64,000 bases of DNA from Mobula hypostoma (Eukaryota). Positions 36,001 to 60,419 of the stretch are shown one piece after another. Position 1 is the first letter of the stretch, and each line of letters opens with the position of its first letter. The notes beneath the pieces were generated by a model. That model worked only from the letters and a program-made list of their open reading frames with translations, was not told the DNA's origin and searched no databases. The position numbers and the translations under genes are program-made. The stretch spans positions 9,238,001-9,302,000 of the forward strand of contig NC_086120.1 in assembly GCF_963921235.1 (NCBI RefSeq). The letters run 5' to 3'.

Positions 36001-39000
36001 ATCATCGAGGCTGGGGTTCTTAGAGCTTGGCTGCGGAATCATCGAGGCTGGGGTACTTGGAGCTCGGCTGCGGGGTTTTCGAGGCTTGGAGCTTGGCTGC
36101 GGGATCTTCAAGCTTGGGTTCTTGGAGTGGGTTCTTGGAGCTTGGCTGCGGGATCTTCAAGCTTAGGTTCTTGGAGCTCGGCTGCGGGGTCTTCGAGGCT
36201 TGGAGCTTGGCTGCGGGATCTTCAAGCTTGGGTTCTTGCAGCTTGGCTGCGGGATCTTCAAGCTTGGGTTCTTGGAGCTAGGCTGCGGCGTCTCGAGGCT
36301 TGGAGCTTGGCTGCGGGATCATCGAGGCTGGGGTACGGAGCTTGGCTGCGGGATCATCGAGGCTGGGGTACGGAGCTTGGCTGCGGGATCATCGAGGCTG
36401 GGGTACGGAGCTTGGCTGCGGGATCATCGAGGCTGGGGTACGGAGCTTGGCTGCGGGATCATCGAGGCTGGGGTACGGAGCTTGGCTGCGGATCATCGAG
36501 GCTGGGGTACGAGCTGGCTGCGGATCATCGAGGCTGGGGTACGGAGCTTGGCTGCGGGATCATCGAGGCTGGGGTACGGAGCTTGGCTGCGGGATCATCG
36601 AGGCTGGGGTACGGAGCTTGGCTGCGGGATCATCGAGGCTGGGGTACTTGGAGCTTCGCTACGGGATCATCGAGGCTGGGGTACGGAGCTTCGCTGAGGG
36701 ATCATCGAGGCTGGGGTACGGAGCTTGGCTGCGGGATCATCGAGGCTGGGGTACTGAGCTTGGCTGCGGGATCATCGAGGCTGGGGTACGGAGCTTGGCT
36801 GCGGGATCATCGAGGCTGGGGTACGGAGCTTGGCTGCGGGATCATCGAGGCTGGGGTACGGAGCTTGGCTGCGGGATCATCGAGGCTGGGGTACGGAGCT
36901 TGGCTGCGGGATCATCGAGGCTGGGGTACGGAGCTTGGCTGCGGGATCATCGAGGCTGGGGTACGGAGCTTGGCTGCGGGATCATCGAGGCTGGGGTACG
37001 GAGCTTGGCTGCGGGATCATCGAGGCTGGGGTACGGAGCTTGGCTGCGGGATCATCGAGGCTGGGGTACGGAGCTTGGCTGCGGGATCATCGAGGCTGGG
37101 GTACTTGGAGCTTGGCTGCGGGATCATCGAGGCTGGGGTACTTGGAGCTTGGCTGCGGGATCATCGAGGCTGGGGTACGGAGCTTGGCTGCGGGATCATC
37201 GAGGCTGGGGTACTGAGCTTGGCTGCGGGATCATCGAGGCTGGGGTACGGAGCTTGGCTGCGGGATCATCGAGGCTGGGGTACGGAGCTTGGCTGCGGGA
37301 TCATCGAGGCTGGGGTACGGAGCTTGGCTGCGGGATCATCGAGGCTGGGGTACGGAGCCTGGCTGCGGGATCATCGAGGCTGGGGTACGGAGCTTGGCTG
37401 CGGGATCATCGAGGCTGGGGTACGGAGCTTGGCTGCGGGATCATCGAGGCTGGGGTACGGAGCTTGGCTGCGGGATCATCGAGGCTGGGGTACTGAGCTT
37501 GGCTGCGGGATCATCGAGGCTGGGGTACGGAGCTTGGCTGCGGGATCATCGAGGCTGGGGTACGGAGCTTGGCTGCGGGATCATCGAGGCTGGGGTACGG
37601 AGCTTGGCTGCGGGATCATCGAGGCTGGGGTACGGAGCTTGGCTGCGGGATCATCGAGGCTGGGGTACTTAGCTTGGCTGCGGGATCATCGAGGCTGGGG
37701 TACGGAGCTTGGCTGCGGGATCATCGAGGCTGGGGTACGGAGCTTGGCTGCGGGATCATCGAGGCTGGGGTACTTGGAGCTTGGCTGCGGGATCATCGAG
37801 GCTGGGGTACGGAGCTTGGCTGCGGGATCATCGAGGCTGGGGTACGGAGCTTGGCTGCGAGATCACCGAGGCTGGGGTACGGAGCTTGGCTGCGGGATCA
37901 TCGAGGCTGGGGTACTTGGAGCTTGGCTGCGGGATCATCGAGGCTGGGGTACGGAGCTTTGCTGCGGGATCATCGAGGCTGGGGTACGGAGCTTGGCTGC
38001 GGGATCATCGAGGCTGTGGTACGGAGCTTGGCTGCGGGATCATCGAGGCTGGGGTACGGAGCTTGGCTGCGGGATCATCGAGGCTGGGGTACTTGGAGCT
38101 TGGCTCCGGGATCATCGAGGCTGGGGTACGGAGCTTGGCTGCGGGATCATCGAGGCTGGGGTACTGAGCTTGGCTGCGGGATCATCGAGGCTAGGGTACG
38201 GAGCTTGGCTGCGGGATCATCGAGGCTGGGGTACGGAGCTTGGCTGCGGGATCATCGAGGCTGGGGTACGGAGTTTGGCTGCGGGATCATCGAGGCTGGG
38301 GTACGGAGCTTGGCTGCGGGATCATCGAGGCTGGGGTACGGAGCTTGGCTGCGGGATCATCGAGGCTGGGGTACGGAGTTTGGCTGCGGGATCATCGAGG
38401 CTGGGGTACGGGGCTTGGCTGCGGGATCATCGAGGCTGGGGTACGGAGCTTGGCTGCGGGATCATCGAGGCTGGCGTTCTTGGAGCTTGGCTGCGGAATC
38501 ATCGAGGCTGGGGTACGGAACTTGGCTGCGGGATCATCGAGGCTGGGGTTCTTAGAGCTTGGCTGCGGAATCATCGAGGCTGGGGTACTTGGAGCTCGGC
38601 TGCGGGGTTTTCGAGGCTTGGAGCTTGGCTGCGGGATCTTCAAGCTTGGGTTCTTGGAGCTTGGGTTCTTGGAGCTTGGCTGCGGGATCTTCAAGCTTAG
38701 GTTCTTGGAGCTCGGCTGCGGGGTCTTCGAGGCTTGGAGCTTGGCTGCGGGATCTTCAAGCTTGGGTTCTTGCAGCTTGGCTGCGGGATCTTCAAGCTTG
38801 GGTTCTTGGAGCTAGGCTGCGGCGTCTTCGAGGCTTGGAGCTTGGCTGCGGGATCATCGAGGCTGGGGTACGGAGCTTCGCTGCGGGATCATCGAGGCTG
38901 GGGTACGGAGCTTGGCTGCGGGATCATCGAGGCTGGGGTACGGAGCTTGGCTGCGGGATCATCGAGGCTGGGGTACGGAGCTTGGCTGCGGGATCATCGA

Positions 39001-42000
39001 GGCTGGGGTACGGAGCTTGGCTGCGGGATCATCGAGGCTGGGGTACGGAGCTTCGCTGCGGGATCATCGAGGCTGGGGTACGGAGCTTGGCTGCGGGATC
39101 ATCGAGGCTGGGGTACTTGGAGCTTCGCTACGGGATCATCGAGGCTGGGGTACGGAGCTTCGCTGAGGGATCATCGAGGCTGGGGTACGGAGCTTTCCTG
39201 CGGGATCATCGAGGCTGGGGTACTGAACTTGGCTGCGGGATCATCGAGGCTGGGGTACGGAGCTTGGCTGCGGGATCATCGAGGCTGGGGTACGGAGCTT
39301 GGCTGCGGGATCATCGTGGCTGGGGTACGGAGCTTGGCTGCGGGATCATCGAGGCTGGGGTACGGAGCTTGGCTGCGGTTTCATCGAGGCTGGGGTACGG
39401 AGCTTGGCTGCGGGATCATCGAGGCTGGGGTACGGAGCTTGGCTGCGGGATCATCGAGGCTGGGGTACGGAGCTTGGCTGCGGGATCATCGAGGCTGGGG
39501 TACGGAGCTTGGCTGCGGGATCATCGAGGCTGGGGTACGGAGCTTGGCTGCGGGATCATCGAGGCTGGGGTACTTGGAGCTTCGATGCGGGATCATCGAG
39601 GCTGGGGTACTTGGAGCTTGGCTGCAGGATCATCGATGCTGGGGTACGGAGCTTGGCTGCGGGATCATCGAGGCTGGGGTACTGAGCTTGGCTGCGGGAT
39701 CATCGAGGCTGGGGTACGGAGCTTGGCTGCGGGATCATCGAGGCTGGGGTACGGAGCTTGGCTGCGGGATCATCGAGGCTGGGGTACGGAGCTTGGCTGC
39801 GGGATCATCGAGGCTGGGGTACGGAGCCTGGCTGCGAGATCATCGAGGCTGGGGTACGGAGCTTGGCTGCGGGATCATCGAGGCTGGGGTACGGAGCTTG
39901 GCTGCGGGATCATCGAGGCTGGGGTACGGAGCTTGGCTGCGGGATCATCGAGGCTGGGGTACTGAGCTTGGCTGCGGGATCATCGAGGCTGGGGTACGGA
40001 GCTTGGCTGCGGGATCATCGAGGCTGGGGTACGGAGCTTGGCTGCGGGATCAACGAGGCTGGGTTACGGAGCTTGGCTGCGGGATCATCGAGGCTGGGGT
40101 ACGGAGCTTGGCTGTGGGATCATCGAGGCTGGGGTACTTAGCTTGGCTGCGGGATCATCGAGGCTGGGGTACGGAGCTTGGCTGCGGGATCATCGAGGCT
40201 GGGGTACGGAGCTTTGCTGCGGGATCATCCAGGCTGGGGTACGGAGCTTGGCTGCGGGATCATCGAGGCTGTGCTACGGAGCTTGGCTGCGGGATCATCG
40301 AGGCTGGGGTACGGAACTTGGCTGCGGGATCATCGAGGCTGGGGTACTTGGAGCTTGGCTGCGGGATCATCGAGGCTGGGGTACGGAGCTTTGCTGCGGG
40401 ATCATCCAGGCTGGGGTACAGAGCTTGGCTGCGGGATCATCGAGGCTGTGGTACGGAGCTTGGCTGCGGGATCATCGAGGCTGGGGTACGGAACTTGGCT
40501 GCGGGATCATCGAGGCTGGGGTACTTGGAGCTTGGCTGCGGGATCATCGAGGCTGGGGTACGGAGCTTGGCTGCGGGATCATCGAGGCTGGGGTACTGAG
40601 CTTGGCTGCGGGATCATCGAGGCTAGGGTACGGAGCTTGGCTGCGGGATCATCGAGGCTGGGGTACGGAGCTTGGCTGCGGGATCATCGAGGCTGGGGTA
40701 CGGAGTTTGGCTGCGGGATCATCGAGGCTGGGGTACGGTGCTTGGCTGCGGGATCATCGAGGCTGGGGTACGGAGCTTGGCTGCGGGATCATCGAGGCAG
40801 GGGTTCTTGGAGCTTGGCTGCGGAATCATCGAGGCTGGGGTACGGAACTTGGCTGCGGGATCATCGAGGCTGGGGTTCTTACAGCTTGGCTGCGGAATCA
40901 TCGAGGCTGGGGTACTTGGAGCTCGGCTGCGGGGTTTTCGAGGCTTGGAGCTTGGCTGCGGGATCTTCAAGCTTGGGTTCTTGGAGCTTGGGTTCTTGGA
41001 GCTTGGCTGCGGGATCTACAAGCTTGGGTTCTTGGAGCTCGGCTGCGGGGTCTTCGAGGCTTGGAGCTTGGCTGCGGGATCTTCAAGCTTGGGTTTTTGC
41101 AGCTTGGCTGCGGGATCTTCAAGCTTGGGTTCTTGGAGCTCGGCTGCGGCGTCTTCGAGGCTTGGAGCTTGGCTGCGGGATCATCGAGGCTGGGGTACGG
41201 AGCTTCGCTGCGGGATCATCGAGGCTGGGGTACGGAGCTTGGCTGCGGGATCATCGAGGCTGGGGTACGGAGCTTGGCTGCGGGATCATCGAGGCTGGGG
41301 TACGGAGCTTGGCTGCGGGATCATCGAGGCTGGGGTACTTCGATCTTGGCTACGGGATCATCGAGGCTGGGGTACTTGGAGCTTCGCTGCGGGATCATCG
41401 AGGCTGGGGTACGGAGCTTGGCTGCGGGATCATCGAGGCTGGGGTACTTGGAGCTTCGCTACGGGATCATCGAGGCTGGGGTACGGAGCTTCGCTGAGGG
41501 ATCATCGAGGCTGGGGTACGGAGCTTGGCTGCGGGATCATCGAGGCTGGGGTACTTGGAGCTTGGCTGCGGGATCATCAATGCTGGGGTACGGAGCTTGG
41601 CTGCGGGATCATCGAGGCTGGGGTACTGAGCTTGGCTGCGGGATCATCGAGGCTGGGGTACGGAGCTTGGCTGCCGGATCATCGAGGCTGGGGTACGGAG
41701 CTTGGCTGCGGGATCATCGAGGCTGGGGTACGGAGCCTGGCTGCGGGATCATCGAGGCTGGGGTCCGGAGCTTGGCTGCGGGATCATCGAGGCTGGGGTA
41801 CGGAGCTTGGCTGCGGGATCATCGAGGCTGGGGTACGGAGCTTGGCTGCGGGATCACCGAGGCTGGGGTACGGAGCTTGGCTGCGGGATCATCTAGGCTG
41901 GGGTACGGAGCTTGGCTGCGGGATCATCGAGGCTGGGGTGCGGAGCTTGGCTGCGGGATCACCGAGGCTGGGGTACGGAGCTTGGCTGCGGGATCATCGA

Positions 42001-45000
42001 GGCTGGGGTACTTGGAGTTTGGCTGCGGGATCATCGAGGCTGGGGTACGGGGCTTGGCTGCGGGATCATCGAGGCTGGGGTACGGAGCTTGGCTGCGGGA
42101 TCATCGAGGCTGGGGTTCTTGGAGCTTGGCTGCGGAATCATCGAGGCTGGGGTACGGAACTTGGCTGCGGGATCATCGAGGCTGGGGTTCTTGGAGCTTG
42201 GCTGCGGAATCATCGAAGCTGGGGTACTTGGAGCTCGGCTGCGGGGTTTTCGAGGCTTGGAGCTTGGCTGCGGGATCTTCAAGCTTGGGTTCTTGGAGCT
42301 TGGCTGCGGGATCTTCAAGCTTGGATTCTTGGAGCTCGGCTGCGGAGTCTTCGAGGCTTGGAGCTTGGCTGCGGGATCTTCAAGCTTGGGTTCTTGGAGC
42401 TTGGCTGCGGGATCATCGAGGCTGGGATACGGAGCTTGGCTGCGGGATCATCGAGGCTGGGGTACGGAGCTTGGCTGCTGGATCAACGAGGCTGGGGTAC
42501 GGAGCTTGGCTGCGGGATCATCGAGGCTGGGGTACGGAGCTTGGCTGCGGGATCATCGAGGCTGGTGTACGGAGCTTCGCTGCGGGATCATCGAGGCTGG
42601 GGTACTGAGCTTGGCTGCGGGATCATCGAGGCTGGGGTACGGAGCTTGGCTGCGGGATCATCGAGGCTGGGGTACGGAGCTTGGCTGCGGGATCAACGAG
42701 GCTGGGGTACGGAGCTTGGCTGCGGGATCATCGAGGCTGGGGTACTTGGAGCTTGGCTGCGGGATCATCGAGGCTGGGGTACTTGGATCTTGGCTACGGG
42801 ATCATCGAGGCTGGGGTACTTGGAGCTTCGCTGCGGGATCATCGAGGCTCGGGTACGGAGCTTGGCTGCGGGATCATCGAGGCTGGGGTACTGAGCTTGG
42901 CTGCGGGATCATCGAGGCTGGGGTACGGAGCTTGGCTGCGGGATCATCAAGGCTGGGGTACGGAGCTTGGCTGCGGGATCATCGAGGCTGGGAAACGGAG
43001 CTTGGCTGCGGGATCATCGAGGCTGGGGTACGGAGCTTGGCTGCGGGATCATCGAGGCTGGGGTACGGAGCTTGGCTGCGGGATCATCGAGGCTGGGGTA
43101 CGGAGCTTGGCTGCGGGATCATCGAGGCTGGGGTACGGAGCATGGCTGCGGGATCATCGAGGCTGGGGTACGGAGCTTGGCTGCGGGATCATCGAGGCTG
43201 GGGTACGGAGCTTGGCTGCGTTATCATCGAGGCTGGGGTACGGAGCTTGGCTGCGGGATCATCGAGGCTGGGGTACGGAGCTTGGCTGCGGGATCATCGA
43301 GGCTGGGGTACGGAGCTTGGCTGCGGGATCAACGAGGCTGGGGTACGGAGCTTGGCTGCGGGATCATCGAGGCTGGGGTACGGAGCTTGGCTGCGGGATC
43401 ATCGAGGCTGGGGTACTGAGCTTGGCTGCGGGATCATCGAGGCTGGGGTACGGAGCTTGGCTGCGGAATCATCGAGGCTGGGGTACGGAGCTTGGCTGCG
43501 GGATCATCGAGGCTGGGGTACGGAGCTTGGCTGCGGGATCATCGAGGCTGGGGTACTTGGAGCTTGGCTGCGGGATCATCGAGGCTGGGGTACGGAGCTT
43601 GGCTGCGGGATCATCGAGGCTGGGGTACTTGGAGCTTCGCTGCGAGATCATTGAGGCTGGGGTACGGAGCTTGGCTGCGGTATCATCGAGGCTGGGGTAC
43701 TGAGCTTGGCTGCGGGATCATCGAGGCTAGGGTACGGAGCTTGGCTGCGGGATCATCGAGGCTGGGGTACGGAGCTTGGCTGCGGGATCATCGAGGCTGG
43801 GGTACGGAGCTTGGCTGCGGGATCATCGAGTCTGGGGTACGGAGCTTGGCTGCGGGATCATCGAGGCTGGGGTACGGAGCTTGGCTGCGGGATCACCGAG
43901 GCTGGGGTACGGAGCTTGGCTGCGGGATCATCTAGGCTGGGGTACGGAGCTTGGCTGCGGGATCATCGAGGCTGGGGTACGGAGCTTGGCTGCGGGATCA
44001 TCGAGGCTGGGGTACGGAGCTTGGCTGCGGGATCACAGAGGCTGGGGTACTTGGAGTTTGGCTGCGGAATCATCGAGGCTGGGGTACGGAGCTTGGCTGC
44101 GGGATCATCGAGGCTGGGGTTCTTGGAGCTTGGCTGCGGAATCATCGAGGCTGGGGTACTTGGAGCTCGTCTGCGGGGTTTTCGAGGCTTGGAGCTTGGC
44201 TGCGGGATCTTCAAGCTTGGGTTCTTAGAGCTTGGCTGCGGGATCTTCAAGCTTGGGTTCTTGGAGCTCGGCTGCGGGGTCTTCGAGGCTTGGAGCTTGG
44301 CTGCGGGAGCTTCAAGCTTGGGTTCTTGGAGCTTGGCTGCGGGATCTTCAAGCTTGGGTTCTTGGAGCTCGGCTGCGGGGTCTTCGAGGCTTGGAGCTTG
44401 GCTGCGGGATCATCGAGGCTGGGGTACGGAGCTTGGCTGCGGGATCATCGAGGCTGGGGTACGGAGCTTGGCTGCGGGATCATCGAGGCTGGGGTACGGA
44501 GCTTCGCTGCGGGATCATCGAGGCTGGGGTACGGAGCTTGGCTGCGGGATCATCGAGGCTGGGGTACGGAGCTTGGCTGCGGGATCATCGAGGCTGGGGT
44601 ACTGAGCTTGGCTGCGGGATCATCGAGGCTGTGGTACTGAGCTTGGCTGCGGGATCATCGAGGCTGGGGTACGGAGCTTGGCTGCGGGATCATCGAGGCT
44701 GGGGTACGGAGCATGGCTGCGGGATCATCGAGGCTGGGGTACGGAGCTTGGCTGCGGGATCATCGAGGCTGGGGTACGGAGCTTGGCTGCGGGATCATCG
44801 AGGCTGGGTTACGGAGCTTGGCTGCGGGATCATCGAGGCTGGGGTACGGAGCTTGGCTGCGGGATCATCGAGGCTGGGGTACGGAGCCTGGCTGCGGGAT
44901 CATCGAGGCTGGGGTACGGAGCTTGGCTGCGGGATCATCGAGGCTGGGGTACGGAGCTTGGCTGCGGGATCACCGAGGCTGGGGTACGGAGCTTGGCTGC

Positions 45001-48000
45001 GGGATCATCTAGGCTGGGGTACGGAGCTTGGCTGCGGGATCATCGAGGCTGGGGTACGGAGCTTGGCTGCGGGATCACCGATGCTGGGGTACGGAGCTTG
45101 GCTGCGGGATCATCGAGGCTGGGGTACTTGGAGTTTGGCTGCGGGATCATCGAGGCTGGGGTACGGGGCTTGGCTACGGGATCATCGAGGCTGGGGTACG
45201 GAGCTTGGCTGCGGGATCATCGAGGCTGGGTTTCTTGGAGCTTGGCTGCGGAATCATCGAGGCTGGGGTACGGAGCTTGGCTGCGGGATCATCGAGGCTG
45301 GGGTTCTTGGAGCTTGGCTGCGGAATCATCGAGGCTGGGGTACTTGGAGCTCGGCTGCGGGGTTTTCGAGACTTGGAGCTTGGCTGCGGGATCTTCAAGC
45401 TTGGGTTCTTGGAGCTTGGCTGCGGGATCTTCAAGCTTGGGTTCTTGGAGCTCGGCTGCGGGGTCTTCGAGGCTTGGAGCTTGGCTGCGGGATCTTCAAG
45501 CTTGGGTTCTTGGAGCTTGGCTGCGGGATCTTCAAGCTTGGGTTCTTGGAGCTCGGCTGCGGGGTCTTCGAGGCTTGGAGCTTGGCTGCGGGATCATCGA
45601 GGCTGGGGTACGGAGCTTGGCTGCGGGATCATCGAGGCTGGGGTACGGAGCTTGGCTGCGGGATCATCGAGGCTGGGGTACTTGGAGCTTGGCTGCGGGA
45701 TCATCGAGGCTGGGGTACGGAGCTTGGCTGCGGGATCATCGAGGCTGGGGTACTGAGCTTGGCTGCGGGATCATCGAGGCTAGGGTACGGAGCTTGGCTG
45801 CGGGATCATCGAGGCTGGGGTACGGAGCTTGGCTGCGGGATCATCGAGGCTGGGGTACGGAGTTTGGCTGCGGGATCATCGAGGCTGGGGTACGGGGCTT
45901 GGCTGCGGGATCATCGAGGCTGGGGTACGGAGCTTGGCTGCGGGATCATCGAGGCTGGGGTTCTTGGAGCTTGGCTGCGGAATCATCGAGGCTGGGGTAC
46001 GGAACTTGGCTGCGGGATCATCGAGGCTGGGGTTCTTAGAGCTTGGCTGCGGAATCATCGAGGCTGGGGTACTTGGAGCTCGGCTGCGGGGTTTTCGAGG
46101 CTTGGAGCTTGGCTGCGGGATCTTCAAGCTTGGGTTCTTGGAGCTTGGGTTCTTGGAGCTTGGCTGCGGGATCTACAAGCTTGGGTTCTTGGAGCTCGGC
46201 TGCGGGGTCTTCGAGGCTTGGAGCTTGGCTGCGGGATCTTCAAGCTTGGGTTTTTGCAGCTTGGCTGCGGGATCTTCAAGCTTGGGTTCTTGGAGCTCGG
46301 CTGCGGCGTCTTCGAGGCTTGGAGCTTGGCTGCGGGATCATCGAGGCTGGGGTACGGAGCTTCGCTGCGGGATCATCGAGGCTGGGGTACGGAGCTTGGC
46401 TGCGGGATCATCGAGGCTGGGGTACGGAGCTTGGCTGCGGGATCATCGAGGCTGGGGTACGGAGCTTGGCTGCGGGATCATCGAGGCTGGGGTACTTCGA
46501 TCTTGGCTACGGGATCATCGAGGCTGGGGTACTTGGAGCTTCGCTGCGGGATCATCGAGGCTGGGGTACGGAGCTTGGCTGCGGGATCATCGAGGCTGGG
46601 GTACTTGGAGCTTCGCTACGGGATCATCGAGGCTGGGGTACGGAGCTTCGCTGAGGGATCATCGAGGCTGGGGTACGGAGCTTGGCTGCGGGATCATCGA
46701 GGCTGGGGTACTTGGAGCTTGGCTGCGGGATCATCGATGCTGGGGTACGGAGCTTGGCTGCGGGATCATCGAGGCTGGGGTACTGAGCTTGGCTGCGGGA
46801 TCATCGAGGCTGGGGTACGGAGCTTGGCTGCCGGATCATCGAGGCTGGGGTACGGAGCTTGGCTGCGGGATCATCGAGGCTGGGGTACGGAGCCTGGCTG
46901 CGGGATCATCGAGGCTGGGGTCCGGAGCTTGGCTGCGGGATCATCGAGGCTGGGGTACGGAGCTTGGCTGCGGGATCATCGAGGCTGGGGTACGGAGCTT
47001 GGCTGCGGGATCACCGAGGCTGGGGTACGGAGCTTGGCTGCGGGATCATCTAGGCTGGGGTACGGAGCTTGGCTGCGGGATCATCGAGGCTGGGGTGCGG
47101 AGCTTGGCTGCGGGATCACCGAGGCTGGGGTACGGAGCTTGGCTGCGGGATCATCGAGGCTGGGGTACTTGGAGTTTGGCTGCGGGATCATCGAGGCTGG
47201 GGTACGGGGCTTGGCTGCGGGATCATCGAGGCTGGGGTACGGAGCTTGGCTGCGGGATCATCGAGGCTGGGGTTCTTGGAGCTTGGCTGCGGAATCATCG
47301 AGGCTGGGGTACGGAACTTGGCTGCGGGATCATCGAGGCTGGGGTTCTTGGAGCTTGGCTGCGGAATCATCGAAGCTGGGGTACTTGGAGCTCGGCTGCG
47401 GGGTTTTCGAGGCTTGGAGCTTGGCTGCGGGATCTTCAAGCTTGGGTTCTTGGAGCTTGGCTGCGGGATCTTCAAGCTTGGATTCTTGGAGCTCGGCTGC
47501 GGGGTCTTCGAGGCTTGGAGCTTGGCTGCGGGATCTTCAAGCTTGGGTTCTTGGAGCTTGGCTGCGGGATCATCGAGGCTGGGATACGGAGCTTGGCTGC
47601 GGGATCATCGAGGCTGGGGTACGGAGCTTGGCTGCTGGATCAACGAGGCTGGGGTACGGAGCTTGGCTGCGGGATCATCGAGGCTGGGGTACGGAGCTTG
47701 GCTGCGGGATCATCGAGGCTGGTGTACGGAGCTTCGCTGCGGGATCATCGAGGCTGGGGTACTGAGCTTGGCTGCGGGATCATCGAGGCTGGGGTACGGA
47801 GCTTGGCTGCGGGATCATCGAGGCTGGGGTACGGAGCTTGGCTGCGGGATCAACGAGGCTGGGGTACGGAGCTTGGCTGCGGGATCATCGAGGCTGGGGT
47901 ACGGAGCTTGGCTGCGGGATCATCGAGGCTGGGGTACTTGGAGCTTGGCTGCGGGATCATCGAGGCTGGGGTACTTGGATCTTGGCTACGGGATCATCGA

Positions 48001-51000
48001 GGCTGGGGTACTTGGAGCTTCGCTGCGGGATCATCGAGGCTCGGGTACGGAGCTTGGCTGCGGGATCATCGAGGCTGGGGTACTTGGAGCTTGGCTGCGG
48101 GATCATCGAGGCTGGGAAACGGAGCTTGGCTGCGGGATCATCGAGGCTGGGGTACGGAGCTTGGCTGCGGGATCATCGAGGCTGGGGTACGGAGCTTGGC
48201 TGCGGGATCATCGAGGCTGGGGTACGGAGCTTGGCTGCGGGATCATCGAGGCTGGGGTACGGAGCATGGCTGCGGGATCATCGAGGCTGGGGTACGGAGC
48301 TTGGCTGCGGGATCATCGAGGCTGGGGTACGGAGCTTGGCTGCGTTATCATCGAGGCTGGGGTACGGAGCTTGGCTGCGGGATCATCGAGGCTGGGGTAC
48401 GGAGCTTGGCTGCGGGATCATCGAGGCTGGGGTACGGAGCTTGGCTGCGGGATCAACGAGGCTGGGGTACGGAGCTTGGCTGCGGGATCATCGAGGCTGG
48501 GGTACGGAGCTTGGCTGCGGGATCATCGAGACCGGGGTACTTAGCTTGGCTGCGGGATCATCGAGGCTGGGGTACGGAGCTTGGCTGCGGGATCATCGAG
48601 TCTGGGGTACGGAGCTTTGCTGCGGGATCATCGAGGCTGGGGTACGGAGCTTGGCTGCGGGATCATCGAGGCTGGGGTACGGAGCTTGGCTGCGGGATCA
48701 TCGAGGCTGGGGTACGGAGCTTGGCTGCGGGATCATCGAGGCTGGGGTACTGAGCTTGGCTGCGGGATCATCGAGGCTGGGGTACGGAGCTTGGCTGCGG
48801 GATCATCGAGGCTGGGGTACGGAGCTTGGCTGCGGAATCATCGAGGCTGGGGTACGGAGCTTGGCTGCGGGATCATCGAGGCTGGGGTACGGAGCTTGGC
48901 TGCGGGATCATCGAGGCTGGGGTACTTGGAGCTTGGCTGCGGGATCATCGAGGCTGGGGTACGGAGCTTGGCTGCGGGATCATCGAGGCTGGGGTACTTG
49001 GAGCTTCGCTGCGGGATCATTGAGGCTGGGGTACGGAGCTTGGCTGCGGTATCATCGAGGCTGGGGTACTGAGCTTGGCTGCGGGATCATCGAGGCTAGG
49101 GTACGGAGCTTGGCTGCGGGATCATCGAGGCTGGGGTACGGAGCTTGGCTGCGGGATCATCGAGGCTGGGGTACGGAGCTTGGCTGCGGGATCATCGAGT
49201 CTGGGGTACGGAGCTTGGCTGCGGGATCATCGACGCTGGGGTACGGAGCTTGGCTGCGGGATCACCGAGGCTGGGGTACGGAGCTTGGCTGCGGGATCAT
49301 CTAGGCTGGGGTACGGAGCTTGGCTGCGGGATCATCGAGGCTGGGGTACGGAGCTTGGCTGCGGGATCACCGAGGCTGGGGTACGGAGCTTGGCTGCGGG
49401 ATCACAGAGGCTGGGGTACTTGGAGTTTGGCTGCGGAATCATCGAGGCTGGGGTACGGAGCTTGGCTGCGGGATCATCGAGGCTGGGGTTCTTGGAGCTT
49501 GGCTGCGGAATCATCGAGGCTGGGGTACTTGGAGCTCGTCTGCGGGGTTTTCGAGGCTTGGAGCTTGGCTGCGGGATCTTCAAGCTTGGGTTCTTAGAGC
49601 TTGGCTGCGGGATCTTCAAGCTTGGGTTCTTGGAGCTCGGCTGCGGGGTCTTCGAGGCTTGGAGCTTGGCTGCGGGAGCTTCAAGCTTGGGTTCTTGGAG
49701 CTTGGCTGCGGGATCTTCAAGCTTGGGTTCTTGGAGCTCGGCTGCGGGGTCTTCGAGGCTTGGAGCTTGGCTGCGGGATCATCGAGGCTGGGGTACGGAG
49801 CTTGGCTGCGGGATCATCGAGGCTGGGGTACGGAGCTTGGCTGCGGGATCATCGAGGCTGGGGTACGGAGCTTCGCTGCGGGATCATCGAGGCTGGGGTA
49901 CGGAGCTTGGCTGCGGGATCATCGAGGCTGGGGTACGGAGCTTGGCTGCGGGATCATCGAGGCTGGGGTACTGAGCTTGGTGCGGGATCATCGAGGCTGT
50001 GGTACTGAGCTTGGCTGCGGGATCATCGAGGCTGGGGTACGGAGCTTGGCTGCGGGATCATCGAGGCTGGGGTACGGAGCATGGCTGCGGGATCATCGAG
50101 GCTGGGGTACGGAGCTTGGCTGCGGGATCATCGAGGCTGGGGTACGGAGCTTGGCTGCGGGATCATCGAGGCTGGGTTACGGAGCTTGGCTGCGGGATCA
50201 TCGGGCTGGGGTACGGAGCTTGGCTGCGGGATCATCGAGGCTGGGGTACGGAGCCTGGCTGCGGGATCATCGAGGCTGGGGTACGGAGCTTGGCTGCGGG
50301 ATCATCGAGGCTGGGGTACGGAGCTTGGCTGCGGGATCACCGAGGCTGGGGTACGGAGCTTGGCTGCGGGATCATCTAGGCTGGGGTACGGAGCTTGGCT
50401 GCGGGATCATCGAGGCTGGGGTACGGAGCTTGGCTGCGGGATCACCGAGGCTGGGGTACGGAGCTTGGCTGCGGGATCATCGAGGCTGGGGTACTTGGAG
50501 TTTGGCTGCGGGATCATCGAGGCTGGGGTACGGGGCTTGGCTACGGGATCATCGAGGCTGGGGTACGGAGCTTGGCTGCGGGATCATCGAAGCTGGGTTT
50601 CTTGGAGCTTGGCTGCGGAATCATCGAGGCTGGGGTACGGAGCTTGGCTGCGGGATCATCGAGGCTGGGGTTCTTGGAGCTTGGCTGCGGAATCATCGAG
50701 GCTGGGGTACTTGGAGCTCGGCTGCGCGGTTTTCGAGACTTGGAGCTTGGCTGCGGGATCTTCAAGCTTGGGTTCTTGGAGCTTGGCTGCGGGATCTTCA
50801 AGCTTGGGTTCTTGGAGCTCGGCTGCGGGGTCTTCGAGGCTTGGAGCTTGGCTGCGGGATCTTCAAGCTTGGGTTCTTGGAGCTTGGCTGCGGGATCTTC
50901 AAGCTTGGGTTCTTGGAGCTCGGCTGCGGGGTCTTCGAGGCTTGGAGCTTGGCTGCGGGATCATCGAGGCTGGGGTACGGAGCTTCGCTGCGGGATCATC

Positions 51001-54000
51001 GAGGCTGGGGTACGGAGCTTGGCTGCGGGATCTTCGAGGCTGGGGTACGGAGCTTGGCTGCGGGATCATCGAGGCTGGGGTACGGAGCTTGGCTGCGGGA
51101 TCATCGAGGCTGGGGTACTGAGCTTGGCTGCGGGATCATCATGGCTGTGGTACTGAGCTTGGCTGCGGGATCATCGAGGCTGGGGTACGGAGCTTGGCTG
51201 CGGGATCATCGAGGCTGGGGTACGGAGCATGGCTGCGGGATCATCGAGGCTGGGGTACGGGGCTTGGCTGCGGTATCATCGAGGCTGGGGTACGGAGCTT
51301 GACTGCGGGATCATCGAGGCTGGGGTACGGAGCTTGGCTGCGGGATCATCGAGGCTGGGGTACGGAGCTTGGCTGCGGGATCATCGAGGCTGGGGTACGG
51401 AGCCTGGCTGCGGGATCATCGAGGCTGGGGTACGGAGCTTGGCTGCGGGATCATCGAGGCTGGGGTACGGAGCTTGGCTGCGGGATCACCGAGGCTGGGG
51501 TACGGAGCTTGGCTGCCGGATCATCTAGGCTGGGGTACGGAGCTTGGCTGCGGGATCACCGAGGCTGGGGTACGGAGCTTGGCTGCCGGATCATCGAGGC
51601 TGGGGTACTTGGAGTTTGGCTGCGGGATCATCGAGGCTGGGGTACGGGGCTTGGCTGCGGGATCATCGAGGCTGGGGTACGGAGCTTGGCTGCGGGATCA
51701 TCGAGGCTGGGGTTCTTGGAGCTTGGCTGCGGAATCATAGAGGCTGGGGTACGGATCTTGGCTGCGGGATCATCGAGGCTGGGGTTCTTGGAGCTTGGCT
51801 GCGGAATCATCGAGGCTGGGGTACTTGGAGCTCGGCTGCGGGGTTTTCGAGGCTTGGAGCTTGGCTGCGGGATCTTCAAGCTTGGGTTCTTGGAGCTTGG
51901 CTGCGGGATCTTCAAGCTTGGGTTCTTGGAGCTCGGCTGCGGGGTCTTCGAGGATTGGAGCTTGGCTGCGGGATCTTCAAGCTTGGGTTCTTGGAGCTTG
52001 GCTGCGGGATCTTCAAGCTTGGGTTCTTGGAGCTCGGCTGCGGGGTCTTCGAGGCTTGGAGCTTGGCTGCGGGATCATCGAGGCTGGGGTACGGAGCTTG
52101 GCTGCGGGATCATCGAGGCTGGGGTACGGAGCTTGGCTGCGGGATCATCGAGGCTGGGGTACGGAGCTTGGCTGCGGGATCATCGAGGCTGGGGTACGGA
52201 GCTTGGCTGCGGGATCATCGAGGCTGGGGTACGGAGCTTGGCTGCGGGATCATCGAGGCTGGGGTACTTGGAGCTTGGCTGCGGGATCATCGAGGCTGGG
52301 GTACTTGGAGCTTGGCTGCGGGATCATCGAGGCTGGGGTACGGAGCTTGGCTTCGGGATCATCGAGGCTGTGGTACTGAGCTTGGCTGCGGGATCATCGA
52401 GGCTGGGGTACGGAGCTTGGCTGCGGGATCATCGAGGCTGGGGTACGGAGCTTGGCTGCGGGATCATCGAGGCTGGGGTACGGAGCCTGGCTGCGGGATC
52501 ATCGAGGCTGGGGTACGGAGCTTGGCTGCGGGATCATCGAGGCTGGGGTACGGAGCTTGGCTGCGGGATCACCGAGGCTGGGGTACGGAGCTTGGCTGCG
52601 GGATCATCGAGGCTGGGGTACGGAGCTTGGCTGCGGGATCACCGAGGCTGGGGTACGGAGCTTGGCTGCGGGATCATCGAGGCTGGGGTACTTGGAGTTT
52701 GGCTGCGGGATCATCGAGGCTGGGGTACGGGGCTTGGCTGCGGGATCATCGAGGCTGGGGTACGGAGCTTGGCTGCGGGATCATCGAGGCTGGGGTTCTT
52801 GGAGCTTGGCTGCGGAATCATCGAGGCTGGGGTACGGATCTTGGCTGCGGGATCATCGAGGCTGGGGTTCTTGGAGCTTGGCTGCGGAATCATCGAGGCT
52901 GGGGTACTTGGAGCTCGGCTGCGGGGTTTTCGAGGCTTGGAGCTTGGCTGCGGGATCTTCAAGCTTGGGTTCTTGGAGCTTGGCTGCGGGATCTTCAAGC
53001 TTGGGTTCTTGGAGCTCGGCTGCGGGGTCTTCGAGGATTGGAGCTTGGCTGCGGGATCTTCAAGCTTGGGTTCTTGGAGCTTGGCTGCGGGATCTTCAAG
53101 CTTGGGTTCTTGGAGCTCGGCTGCGGGGTCTTCGAGGCTTGGAGCTTGGCTGCGGGATCATCGAGGCTGGGGTACGGAGCTTGGCTGCGGGATCATCGAG
53201 GCTGGGGTACGCAGCTTGGCTGCGGTATTATCGAGGCTGGGGTACGGAGCTTGGCTGCGGGATCATCGAGGCTGGGGTACGGAGCTTGGCTGCGGGATCA
53301 TCGAGGCTGGGGTACGGAGCTTGGCTGCGGGATCATCGAGGCTGGGGTACGGAGCTTGGCTGCGGGATCATCGAGGCTGGGGTACTTGGAGCTTGGCTGC
53401 GGGATCATCGAGGCTGGGGTACTTGGAGCTTGGCTGCGGGATCATCGAGGCTGGGGTACGGAGCTTGGCTGCGGGATCATCGAGGCTGTGGTACTGAGCT
53501 TGGCTGCGGGATCATCGAGGCTGGGGTACGGAGCTTGGCTGCGGGATCATCGAGGCTGGGGTACGGAGCTTGGCTGCGGGATCATCGAGGCTGGGGTACG
53601 GAGCTTGGCTGCGGGATCATCGAGGCTGGGGTACGGAGCTTGGCTGCGGGATCATCGAGGCTGGGGTACGGAGCTTGGCTGCGGGATCATCGAGGCTGGG
53701 GTACTGAGCTTGGCTGCGGGATCATCGAGGCTGGGGTACGGAGCTTGGCTGCGGGATCATCGAGGCTGGGGTACGTAGCTTGGCTGCGGGATCATCGAGG
53801 CTGGGGTACGGAGCTTGGCTGCGGGATCATCGAGGCTGGGGTACGGAGCTTGGCTGCGGGATCATCGAGGCTGGGGTACGGAGCTTGGCTGCGGGATCAT
53901 CGAGGCTGGGGTACGGAGCTTGGCTGCGGGATCATCGGGGCTTGGGTACGGAGCTTGGCTGCGGGACCATCGAGGCTGGGGTACTTGGAGCTTGGCTCCG

Positions 54001-54965
54001 GGATCATCGAGGCTGGGGTACGGAGCTTGGCTGCGGGATCATCGAGGCTGGGGTACTGAGCTTTGCTGCGGGATCATCGAGGCGAGGGTACGGAGCTTGG
54101 CTGCGGGATCATCGAGGCTGGGGTACGGAGCTTGGCTGCGGGATCATCGAGGCTGGGGTACGGAGCTTGGCTGCGGGATCATCGAGGCTGGGGTACGGAG
54201 CTTGGCTGCGGGATCATCGAGGCTGGGGTACGGAGCTTGGCTGCGAGATCATCGAGGCTGTGGGTACGGAGCTTGGCTGCGGGATCACCGAGGCTGGGGT
54301 ACGGAGCTTGGCTGCGGGATCATCTAGGCTGGGGTACGGAGCTTGGCTGCGGGATCATCGAGGCTGGGGTACGGAGCTTGGCTGCGGGATCACCGAGGCT
54401 GGGGTACGGAGCTTGGCTGCGTGATCATCGACGCTGGGGTACTTGGAGTTTGGCTGCGGGATCATCGAGGCTGGGGTACGGAGCTTTGCTGCGGGATCAT
54501 CGAGGCTGGGGTACGGAGCTTGGCTGCGGGATCATCGAGGCTGGGGTTCTTGGAGCTTGGCTGCGGAATCATCGAGGCTGGGGTACGGAGCTTGGCTGCG
54601 GGATCATCGAAGCTGGGGTTCTTGGAGCTTGGCTGCGGAATCATCGAGGCTGGGGTACTTGGAGCTCGGCTGCGGGGTTTTCGAGGCTTGGAACTTGGCT
54701 GCGGGATCTTCAAGCTTGGGTTCTTGGAGCTTGGGTTCTTGGAGCTTGGCTGCGGGATCTTCAAGCTTGGGTTCTTGGAGCTCGGCTGCGGGGTCTTCGA
54801 GGCTTGGAGCTTGGCTGCGGGATCTTCAAGCTTGGGTTCTTGGAGCTTGGCTGCGGGATCTTCAAGCTTGGGTTCTTGGAGCTCGGCTGCGGGGTCTTCG
54901 AGGCTTGGAGCTTGGCTGCGGGATCTTCGAGGCTTGGAGCTTGGCTGCGGGATCTTCGAGGCTTG
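1..54965. repeat. Large GC-rich tandem satellite array, 35-bp main monomer (about 1,570 monomers), truncated by the left window edge
   Basis: GGCTGCGGGATCATCGAGGCTGGGGTACGGAGCTT repeats head-to-tail from position 1. Composition is 16 G, 7 C, 5 A, 7 T (66% GC, 3 CpG per unit). Related 37-, 36- and 29-bp variants are interspersed. Similarity ends abruptly after GAGGCTTG at 54965. Confidence 0.99.
54535..54965. repeat. Terminal copy of the 37/29/36-bp variant module that recurs throughout the satellite
   Basis: 37-bp units ending GGGGTTCTTGGAGCTT are followed by the 29-bp GGTTTTCGAG unit (54676), 36-bp TCTTCAAGCTTGGGTTCTTGGAGCTT units and 29-bp TCTTCGAGGCTTGGAGCTT units, directly abutting unique sequence. 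Confidence 0.9.
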
Positions 54966-55040
54966 ATTTCTTCGTCTTGAAATGCGCAGGCTGATCACTC
55001 CGAGGCTGGAGCTCAGAGTTCGACTGGGAACTGAACATCA

Positions 55041-55196
55041 ACATAGAGCCGGGACTAATCCTTCGACAAGCTGGGACTCATCTTTCACACGACAATAACA
55101 TGGGACAGGGCAGAACAGAAAATAGACATAGAGCCTTGACTTACCCTAAGACAAGCCGGGACTCAACTTCATTTCTACACCAAGATGGGACAGGTC
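55041..55196. repeat. Degenerate two-copy tandem repeat, period about 85 bp
   Basis: ACATAGAGCC...GACAAG(C/T)GGGACTCA...ATGGGACAGG occurs starting at 55041 and again at 55126. Confidence 0.75.
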
Positions 55197-55203
55197 CCTC
55201 CGT

Positions 55204-55470
55204 CAGGTAACGGCAGAACGGCCAGACTTACCCAACAGAGGCGAGGACAAGACAAGACAGACCCACCCTATCCCACAGGGCAACGGTAAAACGGCCTGAC
55301 CTACCCCACAGAGGCGAGGACAAGACAAGACAAGACAGGACCCTCCGCAGGACAATGGCAGAACGGCCTGACTTACCCCACGGAGGCGAGGGCAAGACAA
55401 GACAGAACCCCCCGCAGGGCAACGGCAAAACAGCCTGGCTTTCCCCACAGAGGCGAGAACAAGAAGAGAC
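55204..55470. repeat. Minisatellite, about 4 copies of 67-72 bp with internal (GACAA)n
   Basis: Units CAGG(G/T/A)CAACGGCAGAACGGCC...CCCACAGAGGCGAGGACAAGACAAGACAG start at 55204, 55276, 55348 and 55415. Confidence 0.9.
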
Positions 55471-55818
55471 AAACACGAAAGAACAGCAGACAGTTCCATC
55501 TCTGCTTCGGGGAAGCTCCGATTCTCAGTTTGACCAGCAACCTCAACTGGCTACGGAAACAGCTGGATCCCTACCTAGCTCGGAGTGACTGGCAGCCACT
55601 CAGCTGGCCCAGGAAACAGCAGAATCCATACCGCAAAGACAGCTCCGACTACTGACAGCGAGGCTCCATGAAGCGATGGTTCTCCAACACGGCCTAAAGA
55701 TGACAAGTGGCCAGTCTAGCCTTCCACCGGCAGGTTGCTCCCAGGGGAACTGACAAGACAAACCAGTAGCTCACACTCAACCCCAAGGCTACTTATATTC
55801 CAAGCCTCAAGATGGGAA

Positions 55819-55968
55819 TCAGGTGCCTGTGATTATCTCGAACAAGGGACCGCTGGAAGACCCGGAATCCTGGGTCCACGGACCGGACCATGACATCCAT
55901 TGCCTGTAGCTTATCTCCTCCTTGAATCTCATGGTCAAGGTCAGCTGCTGTCTCTCTGTTGGGTCCAT
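55819..55968 (-). pseudogene. Short MDP-initiated ORF (49 aa), possible decayed gag 5' end
   Basis: Translates as MDPTERQQLTLTMRFKEEISYRQWMSWSGPWTQDSGSSSGPLFEIITGT*, just inside the putative LTR. No recognisable gag motif beyond the MDP start. Confidence 0.25.
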
Positions 55969-55990
55969 CTTTATGCACGTCGAGACATGC

Positions 55991-56274
55991 CGTTACCAGG
56001 TTCAGATATGGCCCAAGTGCGGAGTGAGAGCCACTGAAGCAGGTCAATAGTTCGCAAACTTTATTGCAAACAATGTTTAAGGGAAAATATCAGTAAACGC
56101 TAGGCCACATAGGGCCGTTAATGAAGACTAAACTGCGGATGAAAAGAAAATCTAAACATTGAACGAATACGGCTAGTCTTCGAAGTCAGTTGACTCAAAA
56201 GTCCAATTTCTCAGGGAAAGGCTGAAAGCAAAACAGACAGCCAAGCGTTGCTGTTCTCTGTCCAAGTCTCAACA
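55991..56274 (-). mobile_element. Putative LTR (284 bp) of a Ty3/Gypsy-type element oriented toward the satellite
   Basis: On the minus strand it begins TGTTGAG (56274) and ends GTAACG (55991). AATAAA lies at 56065-56060, about 70 bp from the end, followed by CACTTGGGCC. An ATGGACCCA start (55968) sits 23 bp inside. This resembles fish Gypsy LTR/gag junctions as I recall them; there is no second LTR or TSD in the window. Confidence 0.4.
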
Positions 56275-56379
56275 AGCACTACGTCGACAAGTATGGAGTT
56301 AAATACTATCACGATTAAATAATTGGCTGACACGTGCAAATTCACAAACACAATTGCCGTATCTATCTTGCTGCCGAAT

Positions 56380-56596
56380 CCATGGTTGTGACAGTACTGG
56401 TTACACTGAAGTCAATAGGGTATCATGAGTAAAGCACACTAGTGACTGGAATCATATCTCACTTGAAAGAAGATGTTGTGGTTGTTGTACTTCAAACGCT
56501 CCAGTCCCATGATATCACTACAGTAGTTCCTCATGGAATACATTCAACTCAAGCATGTTCTGCTGCTTCATCAGGAATCATCTTTCCTCTGTAAGA
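56380..56596 (+). mobile_element. Highly decayed LINE reverse-transcriptase fragment
   Basis: TGGAATCATATCTC...GAAGATGTTGTGGTTGTTG...GATATCACTACAGTAGTTCCTCATGG...GCTGCTTCATCA follows the LINE RT stretch ESYL..RKMVVVV....DIT.GVPQG......FSCFIN, with indels. Confidence 0.55.
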
Positions 56597-56600
56597 GCTC

Positions 56601-57105: not shown

Positions 57106-57624
57106 ATTTATCAATGAACAATGACTGAAAAAAAAGAAGCAATCTTTCAAAAGACCCACACAAAAACCGCCTTTACAGCAAAATATTGTGAATTCACTCA
57201 TCAGAAAACTCTGTTTAGAAATCAGTTCCCATTGTGTAGATATGTCCACCATAACTATATCATTTCAAATGGCCAGTCTGATATGGTAGTTACAATTCCA
57301 ACTGACCAATGAAATATAAAACAAGATATCATTGTCTTTGATGGAAGTCAGATATTTAAACCCTGATTCGCTCTCCAATGGATACCATCAGAATTGTTGA
57401 GTGTCTCTACTTTAACTTCAGTTTTACGGCTGCTGCAGTATTTGACTTCCTACTTTAAAAGTGGAAAGTTTGAAAGTAAAATCTTCTAGCAGTTAGGCTG
57501 TAGAGTTCTGGGTGTATCTTATTCACCTTGGCCCCAGAAGAACGCTGTCTTGTTGGACTGTCTCCGCGAATTGTTTGACTGTTAATTAAACTTGATTCTA
57601 TTCGATTTGACTTGACTTGAAAAA

Positions 57625-57816: not shown

Positions 57817-58251
57817 TGTCACAACCACGGACTCTGCCGCTGGACGGGGTCTGCGTGTTCTCGCAGGCAGGTCCGGACCAGGTTCGGCAATCATGCTCGC
57901 GAAATTGCAGGTTCCAGCTAAATCGTGTTTCGTTGTGGTGTTTTCCACCCTTCCTCTCGTTCCAGTCTTCCGAGACTTGACCAATAGCAGAGCAACACCG
58001 ATGTTCCCTACTTACCGATGTTCAGGTTCCGGGGAAGAAGATAACCGAGTAGCCTGACGCTGCTCAGAAGCGGTATTTAATTAGTATTAAGTTAGTGCGG
58101 CCAAGCCGCTGTATCGACATGAGCTTTAGTTAGACAGTTCCAGTTAATGGCCCTCTGGCCAAGCGTTATTTTTTTTTTGTTTCGCCACAGTTTCCATTAA
58201 AGTCAAAGAACTGTTCATCTGTTTCAGTCGTTCCCTCCCCGCAATTGGGCC

Positions 58252-60416: not shown

Positions 60417-60419
60417 TAC

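What the first reader, a model, noticed from the sequence alone, without database searches (positions are those of the whole stretch)
54860..56274. The 55-kb satellite may have grown from an internal repeat of an LTR retroelement
Seen: on the minus strand the order is putative LTR (56274-55991), MDP ORF, 67-72-bp repeats, 85-bp repeats, then unique sequence that runs without any junction scar into the satellite. The frame NSELQPRSDQPAHFKTKKSSLEDPAAKLQASK continues straight into the repeat units. The array edge consists of the shortest (29/36-bp) monomers. Known: retroelement internal regions can seed satellites. Inference: the satellite is one internal repeat of this element expanded more than 1,500-fold, so the rest of the element would lie at the far end of the array.
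Basis: partly seen in the sequence, partly recalled or inferred. Interest (0 to 1): 0.75.

Follow-up and report, generated by a model that had tools for sequence, protein, structure and literature searches.

The report
Satellite grown beside a repeat-rich mobile element
A devil-ray satellite of at least 55 kb ends by fading into a copy of a very common, non-coding, repeat-filled mobile element and probably grew from that element's own short repeats, a well-known way satellites arise; the proposed LTR-ORF-repeat retroelement layout does not hold up.

Summary
The described features are present, but several are misread. The 35-bp satellite fills 1-54965 and runs off the window start.

- **Edge monomers.** The short 29/36/51-bp monomers at the edge are not edge-specific. 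The same block recurs 32 times inside the array at about 98% identity.
- **ORFs.** The MDP ORF has 49 codons and no relatives. The frame that runs into the array closes after about 35 codons.
- **Flank.** Public ray contigs show that 54966-56393 is high-copy dispersed DNA, but it is two separate units. U2 (minus strand, 55895 to 54966) carries the 67-73-bp and 85-bp repeats and touches the array. U1 (56393-56396 to about 55990) is LTR-like and about 400 bp long. A diverged inverted copy of U1 lies at 57817-58251.
- **LTR start.** Position 56274 lies inside U1 and is not a terminus. I found no direct LTR pair, no gag or pol, no clear PBS and no TSD.
- **Junction.** The first 60 bp of flank resemble 1.5-2 decayed monomers (empirical p about 0.004).

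The most likely reading is expansion of U2's own short repeat, followed by kb-scale segmental duplication. I could not test dispersed copies or the far end of the array. The scan has reported the same kind of event elsewhere in this genome (s1-141961, s1-142412). The process is known, so interest is low.

The parts
1..54965 (.). Satellite array, main unit 35 bp (974 exact-anchor 35-mers, plus 37-, 36-, 29- and 51-bp variants), cut by the window start. It is built of kb-scale higher-order segments.
   Evidence: TRF gives period 35, 1,554.6 copies and 90% matches. Rare-k-mer offsets of 3.4, 5.2-5.4, 8.5, 14.9 and 24.5 kb mark segmental duplications.
54669..54965 (.). Terminal short-monomer block (types C D B C B B C, then two and a fraction 29-bp C' monomers). 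Only the last roughly 80 bp (54886-54965, C' variant) is edge-specific.
   Evidence: The same block occurs 32 times in the array. The terminal copy is 97.8% identical on average, and at most 98.7%, to internal copies.
54966..55026 (.). About 1.5-2 decayed monomers, where the array fades into the flank.
   Evidence: local alignment to tandem monomers scores 14, and 0.4% of 1,782 control windows reach that; z of 3.6-4.7 against shuffles.
54966..55895 (-). U2, the visible part of a high-copy, non-coding dispersed repeat that carries the tandem repeats and touches the array. On the minus strand it starts about 55895 with (T)GTCATGG.
   Evidence: summed contig depth is 1e4-6e4 in X1, against 5-7 for the exact single-copy contigs and about 90 for low-copy bins. 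Consensus-variant contigs in three runs and two organisms all end at 55894; no ORF over 125 codons, no Pfam match, no relatives.
55028..55194 (.). Two 85-bp repeats (74% identity).
   Evidence: Depth falls to about 110 at the unit junction 55103, so this duplication is rare among family copies.
55181..55480 (.). Four 67-73-bp repeats (64-82% identity). Their copy number varies among family copies.
   Evidence: joints skip 68, 83, 146-155 bp or go back 34 or 128 bp within this stretch.
55819..55968 (-). The 'MDP' ORF, 49 codons, which straddles the spacer and the start of U2. Most likely a chance ORF.
   Evidence: no Pfam family; family boundary at about 55894 inside it.
55896..55991 (.). Poorly represented spacer between U2 and U1.
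   Evidence: the bin 55892-56015 drops to 4.9e3 (X1) and 64 (X9), largely explained by spill-over from its two neighbours. No high-depth joint bridges it.
55988..56396 (-). U1, an LTR-like dispersed unit of about 400 bp. On the minus strand it starts at 56393-56396 (…TGTCACAACC), has AATAAA about 75 nt before a possible …GGCA end at 55988, and homology to the second copy stops at about 56010.
   Evidence: (depth 6.5e3-1.3e4; contigs end at or before 56396; one organism-B contig joins other DNA at 55992).
56215..56292 (.). A 78-bp segment of U1 that a subfamily of copies lacks.
   Evidence: joints 56214/5 to 56293/4 in X1, X2 and X5. The segment is present in the second copy.
57817..58251 (+). 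Second, diverged copy of U1 (about 73% identity) in inverted orientation. It shares the same 5' terminus but has different flanks, and is followed by another repeat.
   Evidence: three collinear matches, best E 1.4e-6; alignment A1.

Best explanation
The array is a satellite derived from a mobile element.

**Origin.** A copy of a very common, protein-less, minisatellite-rich dispersed repeat (U2) sits here on the minus strand, running from about 55895 down to 54966. It natively carried a few 29-37-bp repeats next to its 85-bp and 67-73-bp repeats. Replication slippage or unequal exchange first multiplied these short units. A derived 35-bp variant then took over.

**Growth.** The array grew mainly by repeated duplication of multi-kb segments. 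Each segment holds a run of 35-mers plus one 'aaeaee-CBBCBBC' block. That is why the edge-type block recurs 32 times.

**The neighbouring unit.** The roughly 400-bp unit U1 (56393-56396 to about 55990) is a separate LTR-like repeat that happens to lie 97 bp away. It has not been shown to be the LTR of the element that seeded the array.

**Shown versus inferred.** Shown: the array structure, the high-copy nature and boundaries of U1 and U2, the lack of coding capacity, and the decayed monomers at the junction. Inferred: that family copies natively carry the short repeat, and that expansion happened in place in this copy.
For: - Array and monomer types.
- 32 recurrent blocks, with the terminal one 97.8% identical to internal ones.
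- kb-scale duplications.
- The flank 54966-55895 is represented by tens to over a hundred distinct contigs per site. Its summed depth is 100-1000 times the single-copy level in three organisms.
- The 67-73-bp repeat number varies among family copies (joints).
- No spacer separates array and element, and 54966-55026 resembles 1.5-2 monomers (empirical p 0.004; z up to 4.7).
- The process is documented: short arrays inside LTR retrotransposons expand into satellites (PMC7004042), and this is reviewed in PMC12628747.
- Unchecked leads from this scan say that a common LTR-like element in this genome carries a 36-37-bp repeat that gave rise to a 35-bp satellite (s1-142412, s1-141961).
Against: - I could not fetch any dispersed copy, so it is not shown here that U2 copies carry 29-37-bp units at this position.
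- BLAST finds no significant similarity between the monomers and U2 beyond the first 60 bp. A 15-nt match of similar z occurs by chance elsewhere in the element.
- The far end of the array is outside the window.
- The terminal block is as homogenised as the internal ones, so it is not a visibly older seed.
- Contig depth from Logan data is not a true copy number.
- For the sister array 78 kb upstream, an earlier follow-up concluded that it did not grow from its neighbouring element copy.
Confidence: 0.55

Rival explanations
1. One non-autonomous LTR retroelement lies on the minus strand, with U1 as its 5' LTR, then a leader or ORF, then internal tandem repeats. One of those repeats expanded, and the rest of the element plus a second LTR lies beyond the array.
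For: - U1 is a real dispersed unit about 400 bp long. It has a TG-type start, an AATAAA about 75 nt before a possible CA end, and a conserved 3' region.
- One organism-B contig places a boundary at 55992.
- U1 and U2 have the same orientation and lie only 97 bp apart.
- Protein-less LTR elements filled with minisatellites are reported in this genome by unchecked notes (s1-142055, s1-143054).
Against: - Family contigs of U2 stop at 55894 in three runs, and no high-depth joint links U2 to U1.
- U1 is 2-5 times less represented than U2, the opposite of what is expected for an LTR and its interior (rough measure).
- The proposed LTR start at 56274 is internal.
- No TGG-type primer site directly follows the possible end at 55988.
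- No TSD was found and no gag or pol.
- The only other U1 copy in the window is inverted and is not followed by U2.
Confidence: 0.12
2. This is an unrelated juxtaposition. The satellite arose elsewhere or from non-element DNA, and simply expanded up to, or was joined by rearrangement to, a truncated U2 copy.
For: - There is no significant BLAST similarity between monomers and U2.
- The terminal block is a normal higher-order block, not an older seed.
- No flank k-mers occur inside the array.
- No dispersed copy with monomers could be shown here.
Against: - The flank's first 60 bp resemble monomers in phase.
- There is no spacer or foreign DNA at the joint.
- The adjacent 500 bp of U2 is itself made of two other tandem-repeat families with variable copy number.
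- Unchecked notes link this 35-bp satellite family to a common element's 36-37-bp repeat (s1-142412).
Confidence: 0.2
3. The array descends from the U2 family's repeat but was not born in this copy. It was imported or extended by segmental duplication or gene conversion from another array of the same satellite, for example the 35-bp array reported about 78 kb upstream.
For: - The array is built of multi-kb duplicated segments with offsets up to 24.5 kb.
- The terminal block has no near-identical twin but is 98.7% identical to a block 1.7 kb away.
- A sister 35-bp array nearby was judged not to have grown from its own neighbour (s1-142412, unchecked).
Against: - Decayed monomers and edge-specific C' monomers at the joint fit a native boundary.
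- I could not compare this array with the upstream one.
Confidence: 0.13

Closest known systems
Satellites expanded from short tandem arrays inside LTR retrotransposons (Ogre/Retand-type elements of legumes; Vondrak et al. 2020, PMC7004042)
   Same: A dispersed element with a short internal tandem array occasionally expands it into a long satellite. The array stays attached to element sequence. The array shows higher-order periodicities.
   Different: Here the host is a vertebrate (a ray). The element has no detectable coding region, and its LTR nature is unproven. The short native arrays in dispersed copies were not seen directly.
Expansion of internal arrays of non-autonomous elements (Helitron/Helentron and MITE-borne satellite-like repeats; PMC7492417, reviewed in PMC12628747)
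   Same: A non-coding mobile unit has conserved ends and a central or terminal stretch of variable tandem repeats that can seed satellites.
   Different: Only one terminus is visible here, and it begins with TGTCA rather than Helitron-type ends. No TIR, hairpin or TSD could be checked.
Other element-borne satellites noted by this scan in the same genome (s1-141961, s1-142412, s1-142742; unchecked notes)
   Same: The genome is the same, the satellite is again 35-bp-class, and the idea of a common LTR-like element with a short repeat is the same.
   Different: This array is much larger, at least 55 kb. I could not compare the sequences, so membership of the same element family is not verified.

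Membership tests
LTR retrotransposon (autonomous or non-autonomous LARD/TRIM) | Two long terminal repeats in direct orientation flanking the interior | tested here: inconclusive
   There is no second direct copy of 55988-56396 in the window. The only other copy is inverted and diverged. The far end of the array is outside the window.
LTR retrotransposon (autonomous or non-autonomous LARD/TRIM) | LTR termini TG...CA at the stated boundaries | tested here: not met
   The stated start at 56274 is internal. The true outer end is 56393-56396. A TG start and a possible GGCA end exist at the corrected boundaries, but the inner end is ambiguous (55988, 55992 or 56010).
LTR retrotransposon (autonomous or non-autonomous LARD/TRIM) | Primer-binding site next to the 5' LTR and polypurine tract before the 3' LTR | tested here: inconclusive
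   No TGG follows the possible CA end at 55988. A TGGTAACGG lies just before it. The window has no tRNA genes to compare with. The PPT region is not in the window.
LTR retrotransposon (autonomous or non-autonomous LARD/TRIM) | gag/pol coding capacity (autonomous elements) | tested here: not met
   The longest stop-free stretches are 57-125 codons. None has a Pfam family at E up to 0.1, and no protein relatives were found.
LTR retrotransposon (autonomous or non-autonomous LARD/TRIM) | Target-site duplication of 4-6 bp | tested here: not met
   For U1, no match was found between the upstream 10 nt and the downstream 10 nt at four candidate ends. This cannot be tested for the whole proposed element.
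LTR retrotransposon (autonomous or non-autonomous LARD/TRIM) | LTR and interior contiguous in family copies, with the LTR at least as abundant as the interior | tested here: not met
   U2 contigs end at 55894, no high-depth joint reaches U1, and U1 depth is 2-5 times lower than U2. Depth from contigs is only a rough measure.
Mobile-element-derived satellite (expanded internal tandem repeat) | The array flank is a dispersed repeat | tested here: met
   54966-55895 is covered by 60-120 distinct contigs per site. Its summed depth is 100-1000 times the single-copy level in organisms A, B and C.
Mobile-element-derived satellite (expanded internal tandem repeat) | The array is continuous with the element, with decayed units at the joint | tested here: met
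   There is no spacer. 54966-55026 aligns to 1.5-2 monomers with empirical p 0.004. The strength of this evidence is moderate.
Mobile-element-derived satellite (expanded internal tandem repeat) | Dispersed copies carry a short array of the same unit at the same position | not testable with these tools
No genome search was available. The protein route and the metagenome scans were blank.
Mobile-element-derived satellite (expanded internal tandem repeat) | The remainder of the element lies at the far end of the array | not testable with these tools
   The array runs off the window start.

The most novel reading that the evidence does not exclude
The U2 family would be a vertebrate 'satellite library on wheels'. 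In this reading, a protein-less element with thousands of copies has a short repeat that has independently blown up into large arrays at several loci in devil rays. Those loci would include this array of at least 55 kb and the 11-kb array 78 kb away, both beside an immunoglobulin light-chain cluster. Element mobility, rather than array-to-array exchange, would then decide where satellites arise in this genome.
Probability: 0.25. Interest if true: 0.45.

Novelty: new member of a known kind. Interest (0 to 1): 0.25.

Why it matters
If confirmed, this is a clean vertebrate example of a satellite still attached to the mobile element that seeded it. It is large (at least 55 kb) and has a legible growth history: short native units, then a derived 35-mer, then kb-scale segment duplication. 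This helps explain the high repeat load of ray genomes and where long arrays arise. It does not change what is known, because the process is well described in plants, insects and molluscs and has been noted several times in this same genome. The practical value lies in annotation. The element boundaries are corrected, and there is a warning that the plus strand of the array is stop-free and can yield false genes.

Tried and rejected
1. **Protein route to dispersed copies.** A stop-free translation of U2 and of the array-flank junction ORF found no relatives, so the look-up of encoding contigs could not be used.
2. **Metagenome contigs.** Two exact-pattern scans with U2 motifs were both blank.
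3. **Scan notes.** A look-up by sequence was blank, which means nothing according to the operators. A look-up by place upstream of the window was not possible.
4. **RNA genes.** The Rfam and tRNA scans of the flank found nothing.
5. **Flank sequence inside the array.** A search for flank k-mers within the array found none beyond monomer sequence.
6. **Coding reading of the frame that runs into the array.** Rejected. The period of 35 is not a multiple of 3, and on the minus strand each a, e and B monomer carries a stop triplet.
7. **'Edge monomers are the ancestral seed'.** Rejected as stated, because the block recurs 32 times and is homogenised.
8. **One long LTR spanning 54966-56393.** Rejected because of the family boundary at about 55894 and the independent U1 copy.

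Full report
**What is there.** The window is from a devil ray. The species name comes from earlier notes of this scan. The shark/ray-type SINE, the CR1-like LINE and the immunoglobulin light-chain exon in the flank fit that. A tandem array with a 35-bp main unit fills 1-54965 and is cut by the window start. TRF gives 1,554.6 copies with 90% matches. GC is 0.63 and GC skew is strong up to 54 kb, then both drop.

**Array anatomy.** I split the array at the conserved GCTGCGG anchor. This gives 35-bp 'a' monomers (the majority), 37-bp 'e', 36-bp 'B', 29-bp 'C' and a 51-bp 'D'. The e type is central. B, C and a each differ from it by small indels.

The last monomers before the flank are indeed the short ones (C D B C B B C C C). 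However, the string 'aaeaee C(B/D)BCBBC' occurs 32 times along the array, every 1-3.4 kb. In an alignment of 21 such blocks, each with 220 bp of upstream context, the terminal block is 97.8% identical on average to the others. The range for internal blocks is 96.8-98.4%. The one difference is that the terminal block has no near-identical twin, with a best match of 98.7% against 98.9-99.8% for the others. Only the last roughly 80 bp, a C' variant, is edge-specific.

Rare 45-mers recur at offsets of 3.4, 5.2-5.4, 8.5, 14.9 and 24.5 kb. The array therefore grew largely by duplication of multi-kb segments, each carrying one short-monomer block. The edge is not a gradient of old, short seed units.

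**The ORF claims.** The MDP ORF (55968-55819, minus strand) has 49 codons. On the minus strand every a, e and B monomer holds one stop triplet and only C has none. The median open stretch there is 34 codons. The frame continuity is therefore a by-product of the edge being made of C monomers. None of the stop-free stretches of 54900-56420 (57-125 codons) matches a Pfam family. Two of them, searched against the large protein collection, found nothing.

**Is the flank repetitive elsewhere?** Yes. I laid Logan contigs of four public runs from three organisms on 54900-58600 at a minimum of 80% likeness.

| Stretch | Summed contig depth in run X1 |
|---|---|
| 54966-56387 | 4.9e3 to 6.5e4 |
| Exact single-copy contigs | 5-7 |
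| Low-copy bins (56388-56511, 57132-57500) | about 90 |

Each variable site in 54966-56387 is covered by 60-120 distinct contigs. The same holds in organism B and in a 110-Mb run of organism C. The tool warns that this depth is not a copy number, so I use it only as 'high-copy versus not'.

**The flank is two units, not one element.**

1. *The outer boundary is not 56274.* Contigs carrying the consensus variant at 56348 end at or before 56396. A second, diverged copy of the unit lies in the window at 57817-58251 on the other strand. It gives three collinear BLAST matches, the best with E 1.4e-6, and 73% column identity (alignment A1). It shares the same start (…TGTCACAACC) but has different upstream DNA. 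The segment around 56274 aligns to this second copy, so it is internal. A subfamily of copies lacks 56215-56292 (joints). I call this unit U1 (about 55988 to 56396, minus strand). It is LTR-like: a TG-type start, AATAAA about 75 nt before a possible GGCA end, and a better-conserved 3' part. Its inner end is ambiguous (56010, 55992 or 55988), and I found no TSD.

2. *The satellite-bearing part has its own terminus.* At three sites (55836, 55840, 55851) the contigs carrying the family-consensus letter end 58, 54 and 43 letters away in X1, X2 and X5. All of these point to 55894 (table 3). Depth falls from 3.4e4 to 4.9e3 in the next bin. Most of that remainder is explained by spill-over from both neighbours, and in X9 the remainder is near single-copy level. 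Among the listed joints, some of which have depths as low as 8-500, none links 55894 to 5599x. The common form of the family therefore does not join the two units. I call this unit U2 (55895 to 54966, minus strand, starting (T)GTCATGG).

3. *Relative abundance.* U1 is 2-5 times less represented than U2, the opposite of an LTR and its interior. This is a rough measure.

The MDP start codon lies in the 97-bp spacer between the two units.

**U2 is a repeat-prone element.** More than half of its visible 930 bp is tandem repeat: about 2 decayed monomers, two 85-bp units and four 67-73-bp units. Contigs from organisms A and B skip 68, 83 or 146-155 bp, or go back 34 or 128 bp, within the 67-73-bp stretch. 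Depth collapses at this copy's particular unit junctions (55103, 55269). Unit numbers therefore differ between family copies.

**The joint.** No unique DNA separates the last monomer (truncated at 54965) from U2. Aligned to tandem monomers, 54966-55030 scores 14, and only 0.4% of 1,782 control windows from the rest of the window reach this. The aligned part (54992-55026) matches an a-type monomer at 26 of 34 positions, in phase with the next GGCTG. Shuffle z-scores are 3.6-4.7. This is moderate evidence that the array fades into the element. A 15-nt chance match of similar z occurs elsewhere, and BLAST at E up to 1 sees nothing.

**Most likely mechanism.** A U2 copy with a few native 29-37-bp units underwent slippage or unequal exchange. 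A 2-bp-shorter 35-mer variant became dominant. Repeated unequal exchange of kb-scale segments then built at least 55 kb. The blocks are 97-99.8% identical, whereas most family contigs are only 80-95% like this copy (table 1). The expansion is therefore much younger than the family's spread.

This matches the documented route from short arrays inside retrotransposons to satellites (PMC7004042; review PMC12628747). Earlier unchecked notes of this scan describe the same kind of event in this genome, including a 35-bp satellite 78 kb upstream traced to a 36-37-bp repeat of a common LTR-like element (s1-142412, s1-141961). I treated these as leads only. I could not verify that U2 is that element.

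**What remains open.** I could not obtain dispersed copies. No genome search was available, and the protein and metagenome routes were blank. Two decisive facts are therefore missing: whether U2 copies carry short arrays of these units at this position, and what lies at the far end of the array. My odds are as follows.

| Reading | Probability |
|---|---|
| Expansion of U2's own repeat, in place | 0.55 |
| Unrelated juxtaposition | 0.20 |
| Family-derived array imported from another array | 0.13 |

**Verdict.** This is an ordinary instance of a known process that has already been seen in this genome, so interest is low.

Noticed in passing
window 1-54965, + strand: No monomer type has a stop triplet on the + strand, so all three + frames stay open for up to 1,496 codons (median about 200). 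Gene callers could report long false proteins here.
   Followed up: partly
window 56512-57131: A very high-copy SINE-like repeat, the deepest stretch in all four runs. Hundreds of contigs have loose ends at 56600-56602, 56663, 56997 and 57040, which suggests a composite or rearranged copy.
   Followed up: no
window 58669-60492, - strand: A CR1/L2-type LINE fragment. It has an intact-looking 428-codon RT ORF (RVT_1, E 2.5e-28), an upstream 143-codon ORF, and an (ACATAGAA)n tail at 58669-58697.
   Followed up: partly
window 63277-63576, + strand: An immunoglobulin C1-set exon (Pfam E 2e-16), light-chain-constant-like. It lies 8 kb from the satellite, so the array borders an Ig light-chain cluster, as earlier notes also say.
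   Followed up: partly
window 58247-58482 and 61138-61330: Direct duplicates about 2.9 kb apart, 86-95% identical, flanking the LINE fragment. The first copy starts exactly where the second U1 copy loses homology, and it is itself multi-copy in the public runs.
   Followed up: no
window 854-9692, 40869-47560, 49539-53148: Clear higher-order periodicities of 3.4 kb, 5.2 kb and 1.1-1.2 kb inside the array. This points to different duplication episodes in different parts of the array.
   Followed up: partly
window 61808-61859: A (CT)26 microsatellite.
   Followed up: no
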